Source: Vitrella brassicaformis CCMP3155 (Eukaryota > Protista > Chromerida). Taken from it: a DNA stretch of 42,127 nt. A program made the position numbers and the translations under genes. Under the pieces are notes generated by a model that was not told where the DNA came from, ran no database searches, and worked only from the letters and a program-made list of their open reading frames with translations. The DNA is taken from positions 1-42,127 of the forward strand of contig CDMY01000616.1 of the NCBI GenBank assembly GCA_001179505.1. The letters run 5' to 3'. Shown here piece after piece: positions 33,627-41,586 of the stretch. The stretch's first letter is position 1; each line of letters starts with the position of its first letter.

Positions 33627-36520
33627 ATGTCGGATCTGACTCATCCCGCTGCTGATCTCAAGTGCCTCAAGTGCGGATCTGTTGGCCGGCGAGTCACATG
33701 CCAGCTGTGCGGCGAGATGCTCTACTGCTCAACACGCTGCCTTCGTGAAAATGAAGACGACCATGGGGAGCCGTGTGAGCTCTTCCGCACTCTGGTGAGG
33801 CCGGCCTTCGCCAACACCAACGTCGCCCGGCTGTTTATCGGGTTCCTGGAGATGACCGACTTCCATACCTGTCAGCTAGAGCGCGAGAAGGCTGCCATCG
33901 AGAAGTGCCTCACTAGCGTGAACGGCACAGGGGAGGCCTGTGGTGATCCGACCATTGCTGCAGCTGCATCTGCCGAGATCTCTGAGCCACAGGCTGGCGA
34001 AGTTGATCTGACATTGCGAGGGGCTGCTTTCGGCTCTTGCTTTGGCTTTCACGCTTGCGTGGTGGACGCGACATTCGGAGGCGGTGCAGGTGTTTCTGAG
34101 CTCCCGGCTCTTCGTTTTGTGCCCGTCCTTGACAAGGTCCCCCGTGTGGACTTGCTGCTGCAGTCGCTCGCCAAGGCGGCTGTGCGTGACCTGCAACGGG
34201 CCAAGCTGACGGTTCGGTTCGTCGCTTTCGACCCGCACTTTGAGCCCCAGAACCATTCGCGTCCCTACACACTGGACGGCGTGCCGGTCTTCTCCACCCC
34301 TGACGCCTGCCTGTTGTCTGCCTTGTTCCGCAGCGTTTCCAAGTCCTTCCCGCTCGACAAGTACACCGTGCCGGCGACAGCCTTCCTCAACTGCCCCCCC
34401 AGCTTTGCCGCCTCCATTGGGGCTGTTAAGTGGCCCCGCTTTGTGCGCCATGCGACAGCTGGTCTCCTGGTGCCTTCGCCAGGCGAGCAGTGGGTGGAGG
34501 ATTGGGTGCGGCGCTGTTTGTGGCAGCGACGGATGGACCTAGCGGTGCTGCTTGACGCCAAGGTTGACCAGGACATGGGCAAGCTCAAGGTAGGTAGGGA
34601 AGGAGAGGGCAAAAGAGGGAGGGGCCACCAACTGATATGAACGGCGTGTGTGTCCATTGATTTGCCCGTCTGTCTGCAGAGCAAGGGCAAGGCGATCGAT
34701 GAAAGCGTGCTGGTGGAGCAGCAGCTGGCCCGCCTGCAGAAGGACACTGTGGCCGACTTCATGCGCATCCTCGAGAGGCTCAGGACCGCCGAGCCCATGG
34801 ACATCCATGCCGTCCTCTACGGCACCAATCGACCACTCGGTAGGGCGGCTGCACTCACATGACACAACGTCTCTGACTCACACACAGCGAGGGTGGGTTC
34901 TGCGCCTTCTCGCCATCAGATGCTTCCTTTGCCAGCGGCGACCCAGGTGCTGCTGCCGAGGATGAGCAGGCTGTGTGCGAGCGGCTGGAAGAGGAGATCC
35001 GCCAGGCCAGCGACATGGCTTCGGTCATCACTCGGCTCAAGGAGTTCGAGAAGTCGATTAAGAGCGCACTCGCCGTCAACGTGGGCAGACACACAGGCAG
35101 ATGGCTGGTGGATGGATGGATGGAAGGATGGATGACATACCGGTGTCCCCTGTCTGTGTGTGTGTGCAGGACAATCAGGACCTTTTGGTGCTGGTCTATC
35201 AGCTGGACGTGTATCTGTCCAAGAATGTCGACTTTTACCACTGGGCAGATCTGCTCAAAGTATGGTCCATCGACCCCGGCACAATCACTCACGCTCCGTC
35301 CAACTCCCTCCCTCTCTGCTGCCTGTGCGCCCGTGTCATTCAGGAAAGCACAGGCCTCTGGCGGCTCATCTGCCTCAAGGTCAAGCAGTTCCCTAACAAA
35401 AAGGTCAGCAACACACGTCACGTCACAAAAGGCCATCGACAGTTGGTTGGCGTCAGGGCTTCCTTGTGTGTGTGTGTGGTCAGGTCAAGGAAGAGGCGTG
35501 CAACTTCACCGACAGCATACTGGAGGGATTGGAGTGTGCCCAGCAGATCGCCAACGGCCCTGCACCAAAGGCAAGCTGCCACACAAGGGCGACGCAGACA
35601 GACAGGCAGACACGATACACAGCCACACTCCCTGTCTGTCTGTCTGTCTGTCTGTGTCTGCACACGTGTGTTGTAATGTGTGTGTCAGCGGCCCAAGGTG
35701 TTCCTGGATCTGAACAGCGTGGATGGCAATGGTGGCGAGAGAGTGCGGCGTGTGGTCATCACCCTCTTCACAGACGTCAACCCCAAGGCCGCCAACAACT
35801 TCAGGTGCTACTGCACCGGGGAGAAGGGCGTCGGCACGGAAGGATACCCACTGCACTACAAACGTACATTAGTGACCGATAACACACACACATGCACACA
35901 CAGAGACACACACACAGACAGGCGCTGGAGGAACTTGTGTGTCTTCCTTAAGGTACCATCATCGGCTATGCTGTCAAGGGAACCGACCTGGTGGGCGGCT
36001 ATCTGTCTGACGGCAACTGGACTCACATGACCGACAGCATCTATGGCATGTACCACAGCAAATGGGACCACCGCCGCTCGCTCGTCGCCCCCGGCCGGCC
36101 GGGCGTGGTGTCGCTCATCGGTGAAGCCCCGCCTTCCAAGCGGACCAAGGGCGTCCGCGACTATAAACGGCACGGTAATTACGTCAGTCATCACATGCGT
36201 CACTTTCATGTCAGTCACGTTTCTCATGCATCCCCTCATCCCATGCAGGTGGTCGGTTCCTCATCAGCGTCTCATCGGCCAACTCGGTTCATGTGTACGA
36301 CACGGTGGTCGGGGTCATCGAGGACATCCAGACCATCGCCCACCTGCACAGCATCTCCCTGCTGACCAGGGACGACAGCAGCGCCACCAAGGACAATGGC
36401 AAAGTGGCGACGGACTACGACATGCAGACGGGGCCTCTGTCCTCAACGCCGCCTCTCATTGCACCGGTCATCATCCAGGACTGCGGCCAGCTGCCCGACT
36501 CCGGTGCAATGACTGACTGA
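33627..36520 (+). CDS. zf-MYND protein fused to a C-terminal degenerate cyclophilin-like domain, about 9 exons
   Basis: N-terminus CLKC...CQLC...YCSTRC...H...C. C-terminus RPKVFLDL...[28 protein letters not shown]...PLHYK...SIYG...PGVVSL...RFLI...VIIQDCGQL. Every junction is phase-consistent; one uses a GC donor. Confidence 0.8.
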
Positions 36521-36896
36521 TTTCGCTGCCTGCCTGCCGGCCGGTCTGCCGCAGCCAGCAAAGGATGGACGGATTGGTGGATGGATGGGTCTGTTGATTG
36601 ATTGATGTGCATCTGTCTGGCTGTCTGCCTGTCTGTCTGGCAGTTGTGCAGTTGGTTAACTCATGTGTGGGATCCATGCATGGCGTGAGTGCGAAGGGCT
36701 GGACGTATAGAGTTGAGAATGTCTGTACACTGAGGTCTCTCGACAGACAGACTACATCACATCGAATGTGTGTGTAAGGACATCAAACAAGCGGCGCGTC
36801 CACACCGCACCCCGCAACTAGTCTCCAGCCATCTATATAACACACTACTCCTCCCTCCCTCACCCGCCTCTCCCTCAGCTGAACGCAGCCGTCCCT

Positions 36897-39419
36897 CTAT
36901 CGCTCCAGTGTAAGTCTGGTGTCATCGGCCCTGACCACGACAAATGGCGACCCGGCGGATGCCAGCGCCTCATCCACAGCGCCATTGGCAGACGCCAAGT
37001 AGGCCGGGAAGTGACGCAGCAGGCCGAAATGCGCATTCTGCATGAGAGCAGTGAGAACCTCGCTGATTTCCACCTTCTTGAGCTCTGGTGTGTTGTTGAT
37101 GACGTCCATGATGAAGTCCATCTGCACGTTGCCGAATCGGTCGTGGACGCAGTAGGGGGTGCTCAAGGTCAGTTGCTTGATAGGCGGGAGGCGGGCGGCG
37201 AGCTCGGGTGTCGCAAAGAGGTGGTAGATGGGGGACCTGTGCAACAGGCCCGCCCCGACCGCACCAGCTGGTGGAACGGGCCATGTGTTGGGGAAGAATG
37301 CCAGCACCAGCTCGTCCACATGGCCGCTGGCGTCAAGACACTCGAGTGTCAGCTGCGCGAGGAGGCCGGGGGCGGCCTCACGGGGCGGCGGCTGGCCCGT
37401 GCCGTAGCTTGTGTCGTATCGGCTGGGGAAATCCGTGAGCGTGACGGTGATCTTCTCGAGTTGTCCCTTGGTCGCCGCGAGCAGCTCCCTCACCCCGCCC
37501 TCTCTGAGCAGGTGGAAGGACGGGAACTTGAAGAGAACACGCTTGCTCAGGGAGGGGAAGCGGCTGTACGGGACCGCTGGGACCGACGGCAGCACGCCGC
37601 TGGTGACGGGAACGGCGACAGACTCATGAATGGTCAGCTCGGTCAGCGACTCGAACACGTAGTCGCCGAAGCTGCCGCGGGCAGCCGCCGATGCCGTGCT
37701 CGACACCGCCTTGACCTCCATTGACTCGGCCACCCGAGCCATCTCGCGGACGATCTTCTTGGGCAGCACGTCGGAGGCCGTCAGGGGGAGACGCAGCAGG
37801 TTGTCGTCAAATTCAGAGGGGACATAGACGAGCAGCTTGAAGGGCCGCTGGGTGGGCTGCCTGTCGGCCATCTCGCCACTCGCATCGTTGTCATCGTCAG
37901 CTCTGGAAACCATGTTGGGGAAGAGGGGCGCCCTCCTCCCACCGCCCACAGGCGGCTCGCATGCAGCTGCCGCACTCGAAAACGAAGGGGCCGCGCCGCT
38001 GCTGCCCGCCTGGTGGTGTGGCTGGCTGATCACGTTGGTCATGATATGGTCCTCCCACGATGCGATGGGGATGGCCGTCACGTGGGTGTCGGCAGCCGAT
38101 ACGCCCACACCGGCAAAGCGTTGGATGGCCGTGTCAAGGGCTCGCAGGCTGGTGAGAATACCATCCGGCTCCATGCCCTCCACAGCAAAGTACACGCCGA
38201 GTGTGTCGATGCGGCCGTTGCGTCCGATGGCCCCCTTGGTCTCCAGCACACTCAGCAGCGGCTGCCAGTCCGAGTCGTCCGTCGTCAGAAGGATGCAGCC
38301 GAGCGAGGTCAGGTTGGCCAGGGAGGGGGCGGCCGACAGAGCTGATGGCAGGTAGTGAAGAGGGAGGTTTATCATGTGCAGGTGGGTGAGGTGGGGCGAC
38401 GCCCCGATCCACCTCATGACGTACTGGGGCGCAATGAGAATGCTGACGAACGTCTTGAGGCTGGGAAGGGACCATCGCCGATCATAGGCCGTGCCTTGCC
38501 ACAGCGCCCCACTCATCACCACCTCCCTCGAGCTTGCCGAAGGTGACCCTCGGCGGCCCGGGGCTGCTGTAGACGTTGGGCAGGTCGACGGGCGAGACGG
38601 GCTCGATTGTCGTCTTGTCCTCAAATCGACACTTCTTGAGCGATGCCGCCGAACCCTCCAGCATCTTGGCGTACACCGCCCGATGGCCGCGGGCACGATG
38701 GCGCCCCTCCGTCACCTCCTCGTTGTCGCCCACTACTTGCGCCGGCTCATCGTCCTCTTCTCGCCCGTCGTCACTGGCGGTGTCGTCGCCCGGCTGGTCC
38801 TCATGCCCTCGCGAGTAGACCTCTTCGTCTGTGGCGATGGCGGCCGTCTGCAGGTGGGTCAGCCGGCTCCGCCGCTGCCGCAGGACGGCCCGCGATGCTC
38901 TGCGCCACAGCTTGTGGGTGGCGGGGGTGATGATCAGATGGCGGATGACGAACGGCGAACGGCACGTGTCCTGCATGGTCTTGTTGACGAGAGCCAGACG
39001 GACGGCCTCGAGTGTGGCCATGTGGTCACACACATGGGCCAGCTTCTCTGGCTGAACGCCGCACAGCGATGCATTGGGCGGTGGAGCAGCCTGCTCACAA
39101 CAGCAGACAGACAGACAGACAGGTTCTTATGTGTGCTGAGCTTGATGCTGTGTGACGACTTATATACCAGCTGTCGTTGTCTGATGATCTCATTGGCGAT
39201 GGCCTGAGTCTCGGGGCTGCTGAAATCTGGAACACACACACGCATCGACACAACAGCAACGCATCATGAACACATTTCACGGCACATCTGTGCACGTGGC
39301 GTGCCTGCCATCATCTCCCCTGTCGTTTGCTCATGGCGCTGCTGATGCTCTTGATCCGCCTTGTGTGAAGCAGCGGCAGGCCGCAGGAAGCGACGGATGT
39401 CAGCTTGGCGGCGGGGCAT
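36897..39419 (-). pseudogene. F-box-like/LRR-like protein of a Vitrella-type expanded family, with N-terminal PIP-box-like motif and one frameshift
   Basis: RQL|PEKLAHVCDHMATLEAVRLALVNK resembles an F-box. The frame switches at plus 38525-38527 from ...TFGKLE to EVVMSGALWQGTAYDRRWSLPSL, followed by a long Leu-rich repeat-like ORF to 36897. It could be a sequencing error. Confidence 0.65.
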
Positions 39420-39722
39420 GGTGGAATGAAGTGGCCGACAAAAGCAGCGGGCGGTACAGCAAAGCTCAATTGTGGCTAGAAAGGCAGGAAGCCTGAGGAA
39501 GTGCCGTCTGGGCAGGAAGATCGGGAGGCCCAGCACCACCTGAAAAGGCTGGCTGCTGAGGAAATGATGTGTCGCCCGCAGATGGATAACCTGGGCTATA
39601 GCCTTACAGCCTAATTGGTTTCAACAATCAGGCGACACACCACCTTCGGTGTATGGGGGCGGTCGCTCTTACCCGATATACGAGTGCCCATTGACGAGTG
39701 CCGGCACGGCAGCAACTACGCT

Positions 39723-41586
39723 ATGTCGAAACCTATTGACTATTCCAAGTGGAACCATCTGGATGACAGCAGCGATGACGAGGATCAAACTTGCCAACCG
39801 ACGTCCAAGACGCCAGGCAAGACGCCAGGCAGTCTGTCTGCCACTCACGTCGCCCAATGGACTCCCGGCGACGAATCACAGCCAACACGGCCCTCCACCA
39901 GCACCATATGCGGCCCTCCCGACACTCTCTGTCCCCCCGCGGCTCCCAGACTGACAGTCATCAGCCTCCGGCGTGCGCCACAGACCGTCGCGGCGTCCCG
40001 AAAGGCCAAGAAGGGCAAGACGCATTGCGGCGTACAAATGCCGATCACGTTCGAGGAGATGCCCGGGTGGATGGTGCGGAAGGATCCCGTCGCCCCTGAC
40101 GCAAGTGTCGAGGTCGAGAAGTGCATCGTGTGCCGCAAGCTGCCGCCGGCTGGGAGGGAGCACTTCATGGTGTGCAGCCGCTGTGTCCGGGAGGTCAGTC
40201 CGCATTACTGCGGCCAGGCGTGTTTGCGGCAGCACTTCGGCAGGGGACAGCACCTGCAGCACTTCTGCGAGACTGGGCGGTATCTGTACGACTCCATCCC
40301 TCTCCGTGGCAACTCGGCGGCCGTCAAGTATGTGCTGGGGTGGATGGACGAGGACACCTACATGAAGCTGCAGCGGCGGAAGCAGAAGGCGATTCTTGCC
40401 GAGATCGACAGCAACGGGGAGGCGGTGGTGAAGCTGACGGTGTGCGTCGAGAGCTACGGGACGAGCCGCGTCTACTGCGTCGTCTCGCTGACCAACGAGT
40501 CCCTCCCCGGACACGAAGACCGGACGCCGCCGCCTGACACGGGAGGGATGGTGTATCGCGAGCATGGCACCGTCATCTACTCGTCGTTCATCGTGGCCCC
40601 CGTCTCCACCGGTGGGCTGCTCCATCTGCAGCAGCTGAGCCCCGAGATGCGCGAGGTGATGCACGTCAAGGGCGTGGACGTGATGCAGAAGACGACTTAT
40701 GACCTGCTGAGCAGACAGCCGCCGCTCTTCCCCGCGCCATTGATCTGTGACACGGTCGACTCGGCCTTCTGGAGGGGGGAGAAATGCGCCCTGTCTGTGG
40801 ATGGAGAGGTCTTCCACTGGTACTTCCTGCCGCACGACGCACATGTGAGCGACACATGGGGAAGGAGAGAAACACAGACGGATGGGATTGATTGCTGCAT
40901 GTGGTGTGTGCAGGTGCTCACCACGTCGCTGAGGGACGCTGCAGGCCAGCTGTTTGGGCCGGTGGGGGAGGAAAGGATGACTGAGCTGCTTGCTGGCACA
41001 GCCGCCGCAATGTGCAAGCGGCTCATGGGCGTCAAGGCGTTCCTGAGTCGCGAGGAGTGGCGCAAGGCCATCGTGCAGGAGATCACCCAGAGGGCGGGCC
41101 TGCATGCCCTCTTCACACGGCTGTGCGGCCAACGCGCCACACAGGTGAGATCAGAGGAACAACACGAAGACACAGCACACAGTCACCTGTGGCTGAGTGA
41201 ACTCATCTCTCCCTCTCTCTCTGTGTGTGCAGAGGGATGTGTCGGTGGTCAGCGTCAAGACTGAGTACATCGAGACCGTACTCAGCCACATCGACGCCTT
41301 CCGCAAACAACTGGTCGACTATGCGAGAGACCTCAGGAGCCTCATCGGCACGGGCAACTCGCTCGCCGAGTTTGCCGACATGACCGCCGCCCAGATGCGG
41401 CAGATCGAGGAGGAGCTCTCGCGTGTAAGCTTTCCCCCTGCTATGGAGGAGAGAGTGGCCCGACACCGACAGCCGCTGCGCGACCCCTCGGTGCGCGAGA
41501 GGGTGGAGGGTGGGGTGGTGACGCTGGCGGATGGGAAACGAGTGACGGAGGCTGACCTGGCGCTGAGCGTACATGGGCTCATCTGA
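39723..41586 (+). CDS. MYND-like zinc-finger protein with Cdc37-like N-terminal motif, 3 exons
   Basis: MSKPIDYSKWNHLDDSSDDED and CIVC...CSRC...HYCGQAC...H...C. Two phase-0 GTGAG...CAG introns. Confidence 0.75.

What the first reader, a model, noticed from the sequence alone, without database searches (positions are those of the whole stretch)
33627..36520. zf-MYND fused to a catalytically dead cyclophilin domain
Seen: one phase-consistent spliced ORF runs from a MYND finger through a helical/coiled-coil region into a full cyclophilin fold. The cyclophilin part has no start codon of its own. Aligned to the canonical FHRIIPGFMCQGGD, the query reads [14 protein letters not shown], so R55->Y, F60->T and Q63->V (CypA numbering). 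The WLDGKHVVFG motif (W121, H126) reads approximately [10 protein letters not shown], and there is a basic insertion ([14 protein letters not shown]). Established: these residues form the PPIase and cyclosporin pocket, and MYND fingers bind PxLxP motifs and often partner Hsp90 chaperone pathways. Inference: a pseudo-isomerase scaffold with an architecture I do not recognise from described cyclophilin classes.
Basis: partly seen in the sequence, partly recalled or inferred. Interest (0 to 1): 0.8.

Follow-up and report, generated by a model that had tools for sequence, protein, structure and literature searches.

The report
MYND finger fused to dead cyclophilin
This is a real, expressed gene of the alga Vitrella brassicaformis whose protein joins a MYND-type zinc finger to a cyclophilin domain that keeps its fold but has lost every catalytic residue; it belongs to a family of at least nine copies found so far only in this species, so it is a lineage-specific non-enzyme of unknown role, not an error.

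Summary
Window 33627-36520 (+) is a 9-exon gene. Eight introns are spliced out in transcript contigs from three studies, and intron 6 is GC..AG. The product equals the deposited 729-aa Vitrella brassicaformis protein CEM26477.1 / A0A0G4GBH9.

Layout:
- a MYND-type finger (aa 13-50)
- an alpha/beta domain (about aa 120-300) with weak RNase-H-like fold matches
- a helical region (aa 302-507)
- a cyclophilin-like domain (aa 508-729)

The cyclophilin-like domain folds as a cyclophilin in prediction (TM 0.83-0.87 against solved cyclophilins). All twelve pocket positions examined, including the nine-residue published active site, are replaced: R55Y, F60T, M61D, Q63V, A101I, N102G, A103E, Q111R, F113L, W121S, L122V, H126D. 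The same positions are lost in all eight aligned paralogues.

The family has at least 9 genes, all in Vitrella. It evolves fast, yet dN/dS in the dead domain is 0.57-0.60, with confidence limits below 1. Family genes often sit beside a second family carrying a Cdc37-like N-terminal motif and a MYND-like finger.

No paper describes this architecture. The scan had already noted paralogues on other DNA of this genome. Verdict: a new architectural variant of the known class of non-catalytic cyclophilins. Function is inferred, not shown.

The parts
33627..36520 (+). Whole coding region: 9 exons, 729 codons plus TGA stop
   Evidence: Hand-built model, identical to deposited protein P0012. All 8 junctions are seen in transcript contigs of 3 studies.
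33627..34589 (+). Exon 1 (aa 1-321): MYND finger, post-MYND helices and the alpha/beta domain
33663..33776 (+). MYND-type zinc finger, aa 13-50. Ligands C13 C16 C25 C28 C34 C38 H46 C50. Y33 is kept, but the peptide-contact Gln/Trp are replaced by L39/E43.
   Evidence: Pfam zf-MYND covers profile positions 1-39 at 18.1-19.6 bits, below the 22.7 cut-off. Alignment to the DEAF-1 MYND. Contact residues from PMC4742278.
33984..34526 (+). Alpha/beta domain, about aa 120-300, with predicted beta3-alpha-beta-alpha-beta (RNase-H-like) topology. No conserved acidic triad.
   Evidence: AF2 model, block pLDDT about 55-84. Weak fold matches to transposase, integrase and ROK cores. Invariant columns listed.
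34530..35570 (+). Helical region, aa 302-507, across the end of exon 1 and exons 2-6. It includes the family's most conserved segment (aa 306-337) and a five-helix bundle at aa 406-502.
35571..35688 (+). Intron 6, GC..AG, which joins the helical region to the cyclophilin-like domain. It holds a (CAGA)n/(TCTG)n inverted repeat.
   Evidence: Junction seen in X1, X6 and X7. Donor GCAAGC. Inverted repeat I2.
35689..35863 (+). Exon 7 (aa 508-565): near-canonical first third of the cyclophilin domain (beta1-beta2, helix 1, divergent loop ending in PLHYK)
   Evidence: E = 2e-14 to solved cyclophilins. 57% of the canonical consensus is kept.
35953..36174 (+). Exon 8 (aa 566-639): degenerate middle of the cyclophilin-like domain with Y571 (R55), T576 (F60), D577 (M61), V579 (Q63) and I621-G622-E623 (A101-N102-A103)
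   Evidence: No sequence hit when searched alone. Residues mapped by alignment.
36129..36173 (+). Basic insertion, aa 625-639, in the loop equivalent to CypA 101-111. The loop is 11 residues longer than canonical. It is present in all paralogues, and K628 is invariant.
   Evidence: Low pLDDT in the model.
36249..36520 (+). Exon 9 (aa 640-729): R642 (Q111), L644 (F113), S652 (W121), V653 (L122), D657 (H126), an insertion of about 30 residues, and the retained C-terminal DCGQL strand

Best explanation
This is a genuine, expressed Vitrella brassicaformis gene for a 729-aa, four-part, non-enzymatic protein. The parts are a MYND-type zinc finger, an alpha/beta domain, a helical region and a C-terminal cyclophilin-like domain.

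Origin of the C-terminal domain (shown). It descends from a cytosolic 'divergent-loop' cyclophilin of the plant CypA / Cyp40 type. It keeps the beta-barrel fold. The catalytic arginine and the whole hydrophobic proline/cyclosporin pocket have been replaced, so it cannot work as a normal peptidyl-prolyl isomerase or cyclosporin receptor.

Family (shown). The fusion arose once and was then copied to at least nine genes in this species.

Function (inferred). The protein acts as a protein-interaction adaptor. The dead cyclophilin domain serves as a folded binding or structural module, with a newly fixed charged set (Tyr, Asp/Glu, Gly-Glu, Arg, Asp/Glu) in the old pocket. The atypical MYND finger and the conserved helical segment supply further contacts. 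Partners are unknown. A link to the neighbouring family of genes with a Cdc37-like motif is possible but untested.
For: Gene and fusion.

Cyclophilin homology over 93-97% of the domain at 28-30% identity, best E = 3e-15. PDB cyclophilins match down to E = 4.8e-19.

Predicted fold: pLDDT 76.4, pTM 0.78. Foldseek top hits are divergent-loop cyclophilins at E about 1e-15, with TM by target 0.83-0.87.

Pocket loss at all 12 positions examined in all 8 paralogues, with structural G64, G65, F112 and G130 kept. The role of these residues is taken from PMC2911226.

Constraint: dN/dS of the domain is 0.57-0.60 in three independent paralogue pairs, with bootstrap upper limits of 0.80-0.89. ORFs are intact and intron positions shared across paralogues.

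New conserved residues in the old pocket.

Family confined to Vitrella in an exhaustive search of 1.84 billion representatives with exon 1, and in two metagenome scans.
Against: No biochemical data exist.

The structure is a prediction made from an alignment that included canonical cyclophilins, which biases it towards that fold.

dN/dS of 0.4-0.7 is high for a conserved protein. Half of the old pocket positions are hypervariable among paralogues, which also fits a domain that is merely tolerated.

The MYND match is below Pfam's cut-off for this copy, and its peptide-contact residues are missing, so even its binding role is uncertain.

No partner, localisation or phenotype is known.
Confidence: 0.7

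Rival explanations
1. The cyclophilin-like domain is a tolerated vestige. The family's function lies in the MYND, alpha/beta and helical parts, and the C-terminal domain is drifting with only fold-stability constraint.
For: The exons 8-9 part keeps only about 20% of the canonical consensus. It has higher column entropy among paralogues than the exon 7 part (1.02 against 0.55). Old pocket columns are more variable than the rest (1.31 against 0.85, P = 0.03). dN/dS is 0.54-0.63 in this part. The most conserved family segment is in the helical region.
Against: Omega confidence limits stay below 1 in three independent pairs. No copy of eight has a stop or frameshift in the domain. Six old-pocket positions are fixed in a new state, including an invariant Arg at Q111 and Glu at A103. 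The insertion loop and K628 are conserved.
Confidence: 0.2
2. The old active site has been converted into a diversified recognition pocket. A conserved charged frame with variable specificity positions (60, 63, 101, 113, 121, 122) would let each paralogue bind a different ligand.
For: Mixed pattern of fixed and hypervariable pocket positions. Fast protein evolution with low dS. Mosaic relationships between paralogues: P0009/P0013 are 93% identical in the alpha/beta domain but 57% in the cyclophilin-like domain.
Against: No site shown to be under positive selection. Pairwise omega is below 1. The same pattern is expected from simple relaxation. The mosaic can come from gene conversion.
Confidence: 0.15
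3. The family derives from a domesticated transposase. The finger plus an RNase-H-like core with helical additions resembles hAT or P-element transposases, with a cyclophilin domain captured at the C-terminus.
For: Foldseek's best PDB rows for aa 1-507 are P-element and Hermes transposases (E 0.008-0.03). The ESM-Atlas shape search returns ZBED, FAM200 and P-element RNase-H-like clusters, with TM 0.29-0.46. Integrase and ROK cores score Z 6-7.6 on aa 118-227. The family is multi-copy.
Against: All matches are weak, and the model has a mean pLDDT of only 64.9. There is no sequence-profile match to any transposase. No acidic residue is invariant in the domain. No terminal inverted repeats flank the gene. 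Copies carry conserved introns and different neighbours.
Confidence: 0.1
4. The domain is still an isomerase that uses substitute residues.
For: The fold is retained. A Tyr at the W121 position can support activity in PPIA (PMC2911226), which shows some plasticity.
Against: The Arg55 equivalent is Tyr, Phe or Ser in all copies. Phe60, Met61, Gln63, Phe113, Trp121, Leu122 and His126 are all changed as well. PPIL4, with only Arg55 lost, and PPIL2, PPIL6 and SDCCAG-10, with far milder changes, are already inactive.
Confidence: 0.03
5. Gene-model artefact: two neighbouring genes wrongly joined.
For: The cyclophilin part lies behind a non-canonical GC..AG intron. Transcript contigs break inside exon 7.
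Against: The junction is seen in three studies. A contig spans exon 1 into exon 7. The break is a 39-nt word shared with paralogue P0011. The MMETSP transcript holds the full ORF. Seven further paralogues show the same layout.
Confidence: 0.02

Closest known systems
Divergent-loop cyclophilins (Citrus CsCyp 4jjm, wheat CypA 4e1q, Brugia malayi Cyp-1 1a33/1c5f, C. elegans Cyp-3 1dyw, Cyp40 1ihg)
   Same: They are the best sequence and fold matches. They share the beta-barrel, helix 1 with the NFR-x-x-CTGEKG motif, the extra loop ending in PLHYK, and the C-terminal DCGQL strand.
   Different: Those proteins are active isomerases and cyclosporin binders. Here every pocket residue is replaced, two loops are lengthened by about 11 and about 30 residues, and the domain sits at the end of a 500-residue unrelated N-terminal part.
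Human non-catalytic or atypical cyclophilins: PPIL2, PPIL6, SDCCAG-10 (CWC27), PPIL4 (PMC2911226)
   Same: They are cyclophilin folds inside larger proteins, with no tetrapeptide activity or cyclosporin binding. They are thought to act as proline-binding or structural modules.
   Different: Those keep Arg55 (except PPIL4) and most of the pocket, and a single residue change can restore PPIL2 activity. The Vitrella family has lost all 12 pocket positions examined and carries different partner domains.
MYND proteins BS69/ZMYND11, DEAF-1 and ETO (PMC4742278)
   Same: C4-C2HC ligand pattern with canonical spacing, and the conserved Tyr before the fifth Cys.
   Different: The Gln and Trp that hold the PxLxP peptide are Leu and Glu in this protein and its six close paralogues. 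Only the divergent P0004 subfamily keeps the Trp.
Multi-domain cyclophilins with other partners (TPR, FKBP+TPR, CS, SYF2) seen as nearest ESM-Atlas clusters
   Same: A cyclophilin domain combined with protein-interaction domains in protists and algae.
   Different: None of the listed clusters carries a MYND finger or the alpha/beta plus helical middle part. Their cyclophilin domains are recognised by Pfam in all members.

Membership tests
Cyclophilin-type PPIase / cyclophilin-like domain (Pfam PF00160) | Profile match at or above the curated cut-off | tested here: met
   23.0 bits against 21.7, covering profile positions 11-153 of 159 and aa 528-691. The margin is narrow. Exons 8 and 9 searched alone give no hit.
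Cyclophilin-type PPIase / cyclophilin-like domain (Pfam PF00160) | Eight-stranded beta-barrel with two helices | tested here: met
   AF2 model with pTM 0.78. Foldseek finds solved cyclophilins at E about 1e-15 with TM by target 0.83-0.87. This is a prediction, not a solved structure.
Active cyclophilin isomerases | Invariant catalytic Arg55 | tested here: not met
   Tyr571 here. The eight paralogues have Y/Y/Y/Y/Y/F/S/S at this position.
Active cyclophilin isomerases | Pocket residues Phe60, Met61, Gln63, Ala101, Phe113, Trp121, Leu122, His126 | tested here: not met
   T, D, V, I, L, S, V and D in this protein. All are changed in all seven close paralogues, and in the divergent P0004 only Phe113 is retained. 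The residue list is from PMC2911226.
Active cyclophilin isomerases | PPIase activity and cyclosporin A binding | not testable with these tools
   Needs recombinant protein.
MYND zinc finger (Pfam PF01753) | C4-C2HC ligands with canonical spacing | tested here: met
   C13, C16, C25, C28, C34, C38, H46 and C50. They align ligand for ligand with the DEAF-1 MYND.
MYND zinc finger (Pfam PF01753) | Profile score at or above the cut-off | tested here: not met
   18.1-19.6 bits against 22.7 for this copy. Paralogues P0001 (22.8) and P0004 (26.2) pass.
MYND zinc finger (PxLxP-binding type) | Conserved Tyr, Gln and Trp that contact the peptide | tested here: not met
   Tyr33 is kept. Gln is replaced by Leu39 and Trp by Glu43.
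RNase-H-like / DDE transposase | RNase-H-like core fold | tested here: inconclusive
   Weak but thematically consistent matches, on a model with mean pLDDT 64.9.
RNase-H-like / DDE transposase | Conserved acidic catalytic triad and terminal inverted repeats | tested here: not met
   No invariant Asp or Glu in aa 56-300. Only low-complexity inverted repeats lie around the gene.

The most novel reading that the evidence does not exclude
In Vitrella a cyclophilin active site was rebuilt into a new recognition pocket. The pocket has a fixed charged frame and paralogue-specific variable positions, and sits on an adaptor with an atypical MYND finger. This expanding family works together with the genomically linked family carrying a Cdc37-like N-terminal motif, as a lineage-specific client-sorting or co-chaperone system.
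Probability: 0.15. Interest if true: 0.65.

Novelty: new variant of a known kind. Interest (0 to 1): 0.4.

Why it matters
Non-catalytic cyclophilins are known, but they usually keep most of the pocket. This family shows a complete replacement of the pocket while the fold and part of the surface stay conserved, and the result was then copied many times in one chromerid alga, a close photosynthetic relative of apicomplexan parasites.

If the remodelled pocket binds something, this would be a clear natural case of an isomerase fold re-used as a recognition module. The repeated linkage to genes with a Cdc37-like motif would then point to a testable partner.

If the pocket binds nothing, the family is simply a fast-evolving lineage-specific gene family of unknown role. 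For annotation, the deposited name 'PPIase cyclophilin-type domain-containing protein' should not be read as an enzyme assignment.

Tried and rejected
- Exons 8 and 9 searched alone against Pfam and PDB sequences gave nothing. Only the joined domain or the family profile reaches cyclophilins.
- A profile search of the 5.8-billion-protein index with the full-length family alignment was swamped by 8000 word-sharing candidates and returned only five family members.
- ESM-Atlas feature searches gave no usable hit. The Atlas's own model is poor, at pLDDT 0.47.
- Two metagenome scans found no relatives. One used the N-terminal profile and one the degenerate cyclophilin part. One attempt failed for lack of a conserved stretch.
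- The profile of aa 1-507 against PDB sequences gave only a marginal MYND hit.
- The other exon-1 hits outside Vitrella are generic MYND proteins or a repetitive false hit. P0003, from an unidentified Logan run, shares only the finger and about 40 following residues.
- The 599-aa ORF downstream (36897-38696, minus strand) is unrelated to the family (hhalign probability 0.2%) and has no Pfam match.
- The neighbour family with the Cdc37-like motif shares only the finger and post-finger helix with this family (E about 5e-4, probability 30-35%), so common descent of the whole N-terminal part is not shown.
- Contig depth was not used to compare 5' and 3' expression, as the tool warns against it.
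- The CDS of P0010 could not be rebuilt by my exact splicing script, so it was left out of the dN/dS tests.
Full report
**What is there**

Window 33627-36520 on the + strand holds a nine-exon gene. I built the model by eye from three-frame translations. It joins to 2190 nt and 729 codons with one terminal stop. Seven introns are GT..AG. Intron 6 (35571-35688), the one joining the helical part to the cyclophilin part, is GC..AG.

The translation is identical, residue for residue, to a deposited protein of Vitrella brassicaformis CCMP3155. Its accessions are CEM26477.1 and UniProt A0A0G4GBH9, and it is auto-named 'PPIase cyclophilin-type domain-containing protein'. That fixes the organism. The protein also exists as an MMETSP transcript ORF.

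**Expression and the fusion**

Eight runs hold the stretch. Four of them hold about 60-67% of its words, which is the exonic share.

I laid three of these (X1, X6, X7; three different studies) beside a full-coverage DNA run (X3). All eight junctions appear in each of the three, and none appears in X3, which covers the introns instead.

- One spliced contig per run reaches from exon 1 (33745-33800) to 35826, which is 140 nt into the first cyclophilin exon.
- Another starts inside that exon and runs through exons 8 and 9 into the 3' UTR.
- The break between them, and a similar one at 33795-33829, falls on words of 35-39 nt that are exactly shared with paralogues P0001/P0010 and P0011. These are assembly-graph breaks, not transcript ends.

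An additional internal start cannot be excluded from contigs alone.

**The cyclophilin-like domain**

Sequence evidence:
- Exon 7 alone matches solved cyclophilins at E = 2e-14. It carries the NFR-x-x-CTGEKG helix and the extra loop ending in PLHYK that marks 'divergent-loop' cyclophilins.
- Exons 8 and 9 alone match nothing.
- The joined domain (aa 500-729) aligns to canonical cyclophilins over 93-97% of its length at 28-30% identity, best E = 3e-15. It matches PDB cyclophilins down to E = 4.8e-19.
- The full protein passes the Pfam Pro_isomerase cut-off narrowly, at 23.0 against 21.7 bits.

Fold evidence: an AlphaFold2 model built on eight paralogues plus ten canonical cyclophilins has pLDDT 76.4 and pTM 0.78. 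Foldseek places it on divergent-loop cyclophilins at E about 1e-15, with TM by target 0.83-0.87. The alignment contained canonical cyclophilins, so the model leans towards that fold.

**The pocket**

The published active site is Arg55 plus Phe60, Met61, Gln63, Ala101, Phe113, Trp121, Leu122 and His126 (PMC2911226). The MAFFT alignment gives the table below. A HMMER pairwise alignment independently agrees for the first block.

| CypA position | Residue here |
|---|---|
| R55 | Y571 |
| F60 | T576 |
| M61 | D577 |
| Q63 | V579 |
| A101-N102-A103 | I621-G622-E623 |
| Q111 | R642 |
| F113 | L644 |
| W121 | S652 |
| L122 | V653 |
| H126 | D657 |

Structural residues G64, G65, F112 and G130 are kept. 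The same positions are lost in all eight aligned paralogues.

Two loops are longer than in canonical cyclophilins. The other is about 30 residues before the last strand.

By comparison, the human cyclophilins PPIL2, PPIL6 and SDCCAG-10 are already inactive with far milder changes, and PPIL4 lacks Arg55 only. Loss of normal isomerase and cyclosporin-binding function is therefore a strong inference, although no assay exists.

**The MYND finger**

All eight zinc ligands are present with canonical spacing and align with the DEAF-1 MYND. The Pfam score for this copy is below the cut-off (18.1-19.6 against 22.7), while two paralogues pass.

Three non-ligand residues (Tyr, Gln, Trp) are strictly conserved in BS69, ETO and DEAF-1, and they contact the PxLxP peptide (PMC4742278). 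Only the Tyr is kept here. Gln is Leu39 and Trp is Glu43, and the same holds in the six other close paralogues.

**The middle**

A model of aa 1-507 built on eight paralogues is of moderate quality (pLDDT 64.9). The finger itself scores below 50. The model shows an alpha/beta domain (about aa 120-300) followed by helices (aa 302-500).

- No Pfam family and no PDB sequence matches this part.
- The alpha/beta domain's fold matches are weak but point one way: P-element and Hermes transposases, NurA and RuvC in Foldseek (E 0.008-0.3); ZBED, FAM200 and P-element RNase-H-like clusters in the Atlas shape search (TM 0.29-0.46); and ROK kinase and integrase cores at Z 6-7.6 on aa 118-227.
- I read this as a possible RNase-H-like topology, nothing more. 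No acidic residue is invariant in the domain, and no terminal inverted repeats flank the gene.
- The bundle at aa 406-502 resembles TFIIS-N/LW/HEAT-type helical units at Z 10-12, which is below the level that is meaningful for helical bundles.
- The most conserved stretch of the whole family is a helix-loop-helix at aa 306-337.

**The family**

An exhaustive phmmer search of 1.84 billion representatives with exon 1 found one close cluster and one distant one. Both are from Vitrella.

The members are P0001, P0008, P0009, P0010, P0011, P0012 (this gene) and P0013, plus the divergent P0004/P0014 at 26% identity. A further P0004-like gene lies tail-to-tail with P0008 and is annotated as two genes. 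That makes at least nine genes.

- Exon structure is shared among paralogues, with 9 or 10 exons.
- P0009 and P0013 lie head to head and lack the finger in their gene models.
- Domain-wise identities are mosaic. P0009/P0013 are 93% identical in the alpha/beta domain but 57% in the cyclophilin-like domain, which suggests exchange between copies.
- Two metagenome scans found no relatives, and no paper describes the architecture.
- The other exon-1 hits outside Vitrella share only the finger, or the finger plus about 40 following residues (P0003, P0007), or are spurious.

**Constraint**

Nei-Gojobori estimates give dN/dS of 0.4-0.7 for whole genes, 0.18-0.28 for the finger and 0.39-0.60 for the cyclophilin-like domain.

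In three independent pairs the domain gives 0.57-0.60, with bootstrap 95% upper limits of 0.80-0.89. Its degenerate exons 8-9 part gives 0.54-0.63, with upper limits of 0.80-0.93. Selection is therefore weak but present.

Among the seven close paralogues the twelve old pocket columns are more variable than the rest of the domain (entropy 1.31 against 0.85, permutation P = 0.03). Canonical cyclophilins show the reverse (0.60 against 0.82). Six pocket columns are nevertheless fixed in a new state: Tyr at 55, Asp/Glu at 61, Gly at 102, Glu at 103, Arg at 111 and Asp/Glu at 126. The first third of the domain keeps 57% of the canonical consensus and the rest about 20%.

**Neighbourhood**

Downstream in the window, at 39720-41586 (+), is a gene whose product starts with a motif like the Cdc37 N-terminus. 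This is visible by eye but not significant: CDC37_N scores 12 bits against a cut-off of 26.1. The product also carries a MYND-like finger.

Homologues of this gene lie next to family members at three other loci:
- head to head with P0008;
- between P0001 and P0010, head to head with the latter;
- convergent with P0009.

None lies within 10 kb of P0011 or P0014. Profile comparison links the two families only over the finger and the next helix (E about 5e-4, probability 30-35%). The linkage may reflect co-duplication, shared origin or shared function, and I cannot tell which.

Two earlier notes of this scan on other DNA of the same genome describe such pairs. I reproduced the arrangements on loci I fetched myself.

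**Reading**

- Shown: one gene, one transcript, the domain order, loss of the whole pocket, the family-wide pattern, and weak purifying selection.
- Inferred: the protein is a non-catalytic adaptor in which the dead cyclophilin fold is a binding or structural module.
- Rivals, in order of weight: a tolerated vestige; a diversified recognition pocket; a transposase-derived family; a still-active enzyme; an annotation artefact.

It is a new architectural variant of the known class of non-catalytic cyclophilins. It is already present in public databases but, as far as the searched literature goes, undescribed.

Noticed in passing
window 39720-41586 (+): This gene's product begins with a motif like the Cdc37 N-terminus (PIDYSKW-N-x-L-DDSSDDED). 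It is followed by a MYND-like finger and a post-finger helix resembling the one in the MYND-cyclophilin family. Homologues lie beside family members at three other loci (L001 7984-9796, L005 13472-14979, L003 4944-6439).
   Followed up: partly
window 36897-38696 (-): A 599-aa single-exon ORF lies convergent with the gene. It has no Pfam match and no relation to the family. Transcript contigs of the studied gene's 3' end run on past 36800 towards it, so the two 3' ends may overlap.
   Followed up: partly
L003 7067-9628 (-) and 10001-12582 (+): Paralogues P0009 and P0013 lie head to head, 372 bp apart, and both lack the MYND finger in their gene models. They are 93% identical in the alpha/beta domain but only 57% in the cyclophilin-like domain, a mosaic that suggests exchange with other copies.
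   Followed up: partly
L001 13371-16360 (-): A full-length relative of the divergent P0004 subfamily lies tail to tail with P0008. It is annotated as two genes (165 aa and 634 aa), which is probably a split gene model.
   Followed up: partly
window 35591-35612 and 35637-35658 (intron 6); also 35098-35140, 35881-35924 and 36592-36705: Introns and the 3' UTR carry (CAGA)n/(TCTG)n tracts. In the GC..AG intron they form a 22-nt inverted repeat that is 91% complementary. These tracts have very high word depth in all runs and cut the assemblies.
   Followed up: no
window 33795-33829 and 35797-35835: Exact words of 35 and 39 nt are shared with paralogues (L005, L004) despite about 55-60% protein identity overall. 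They could be short gene-conversion tracts or strongly constrained codons.
   Followed up: partly
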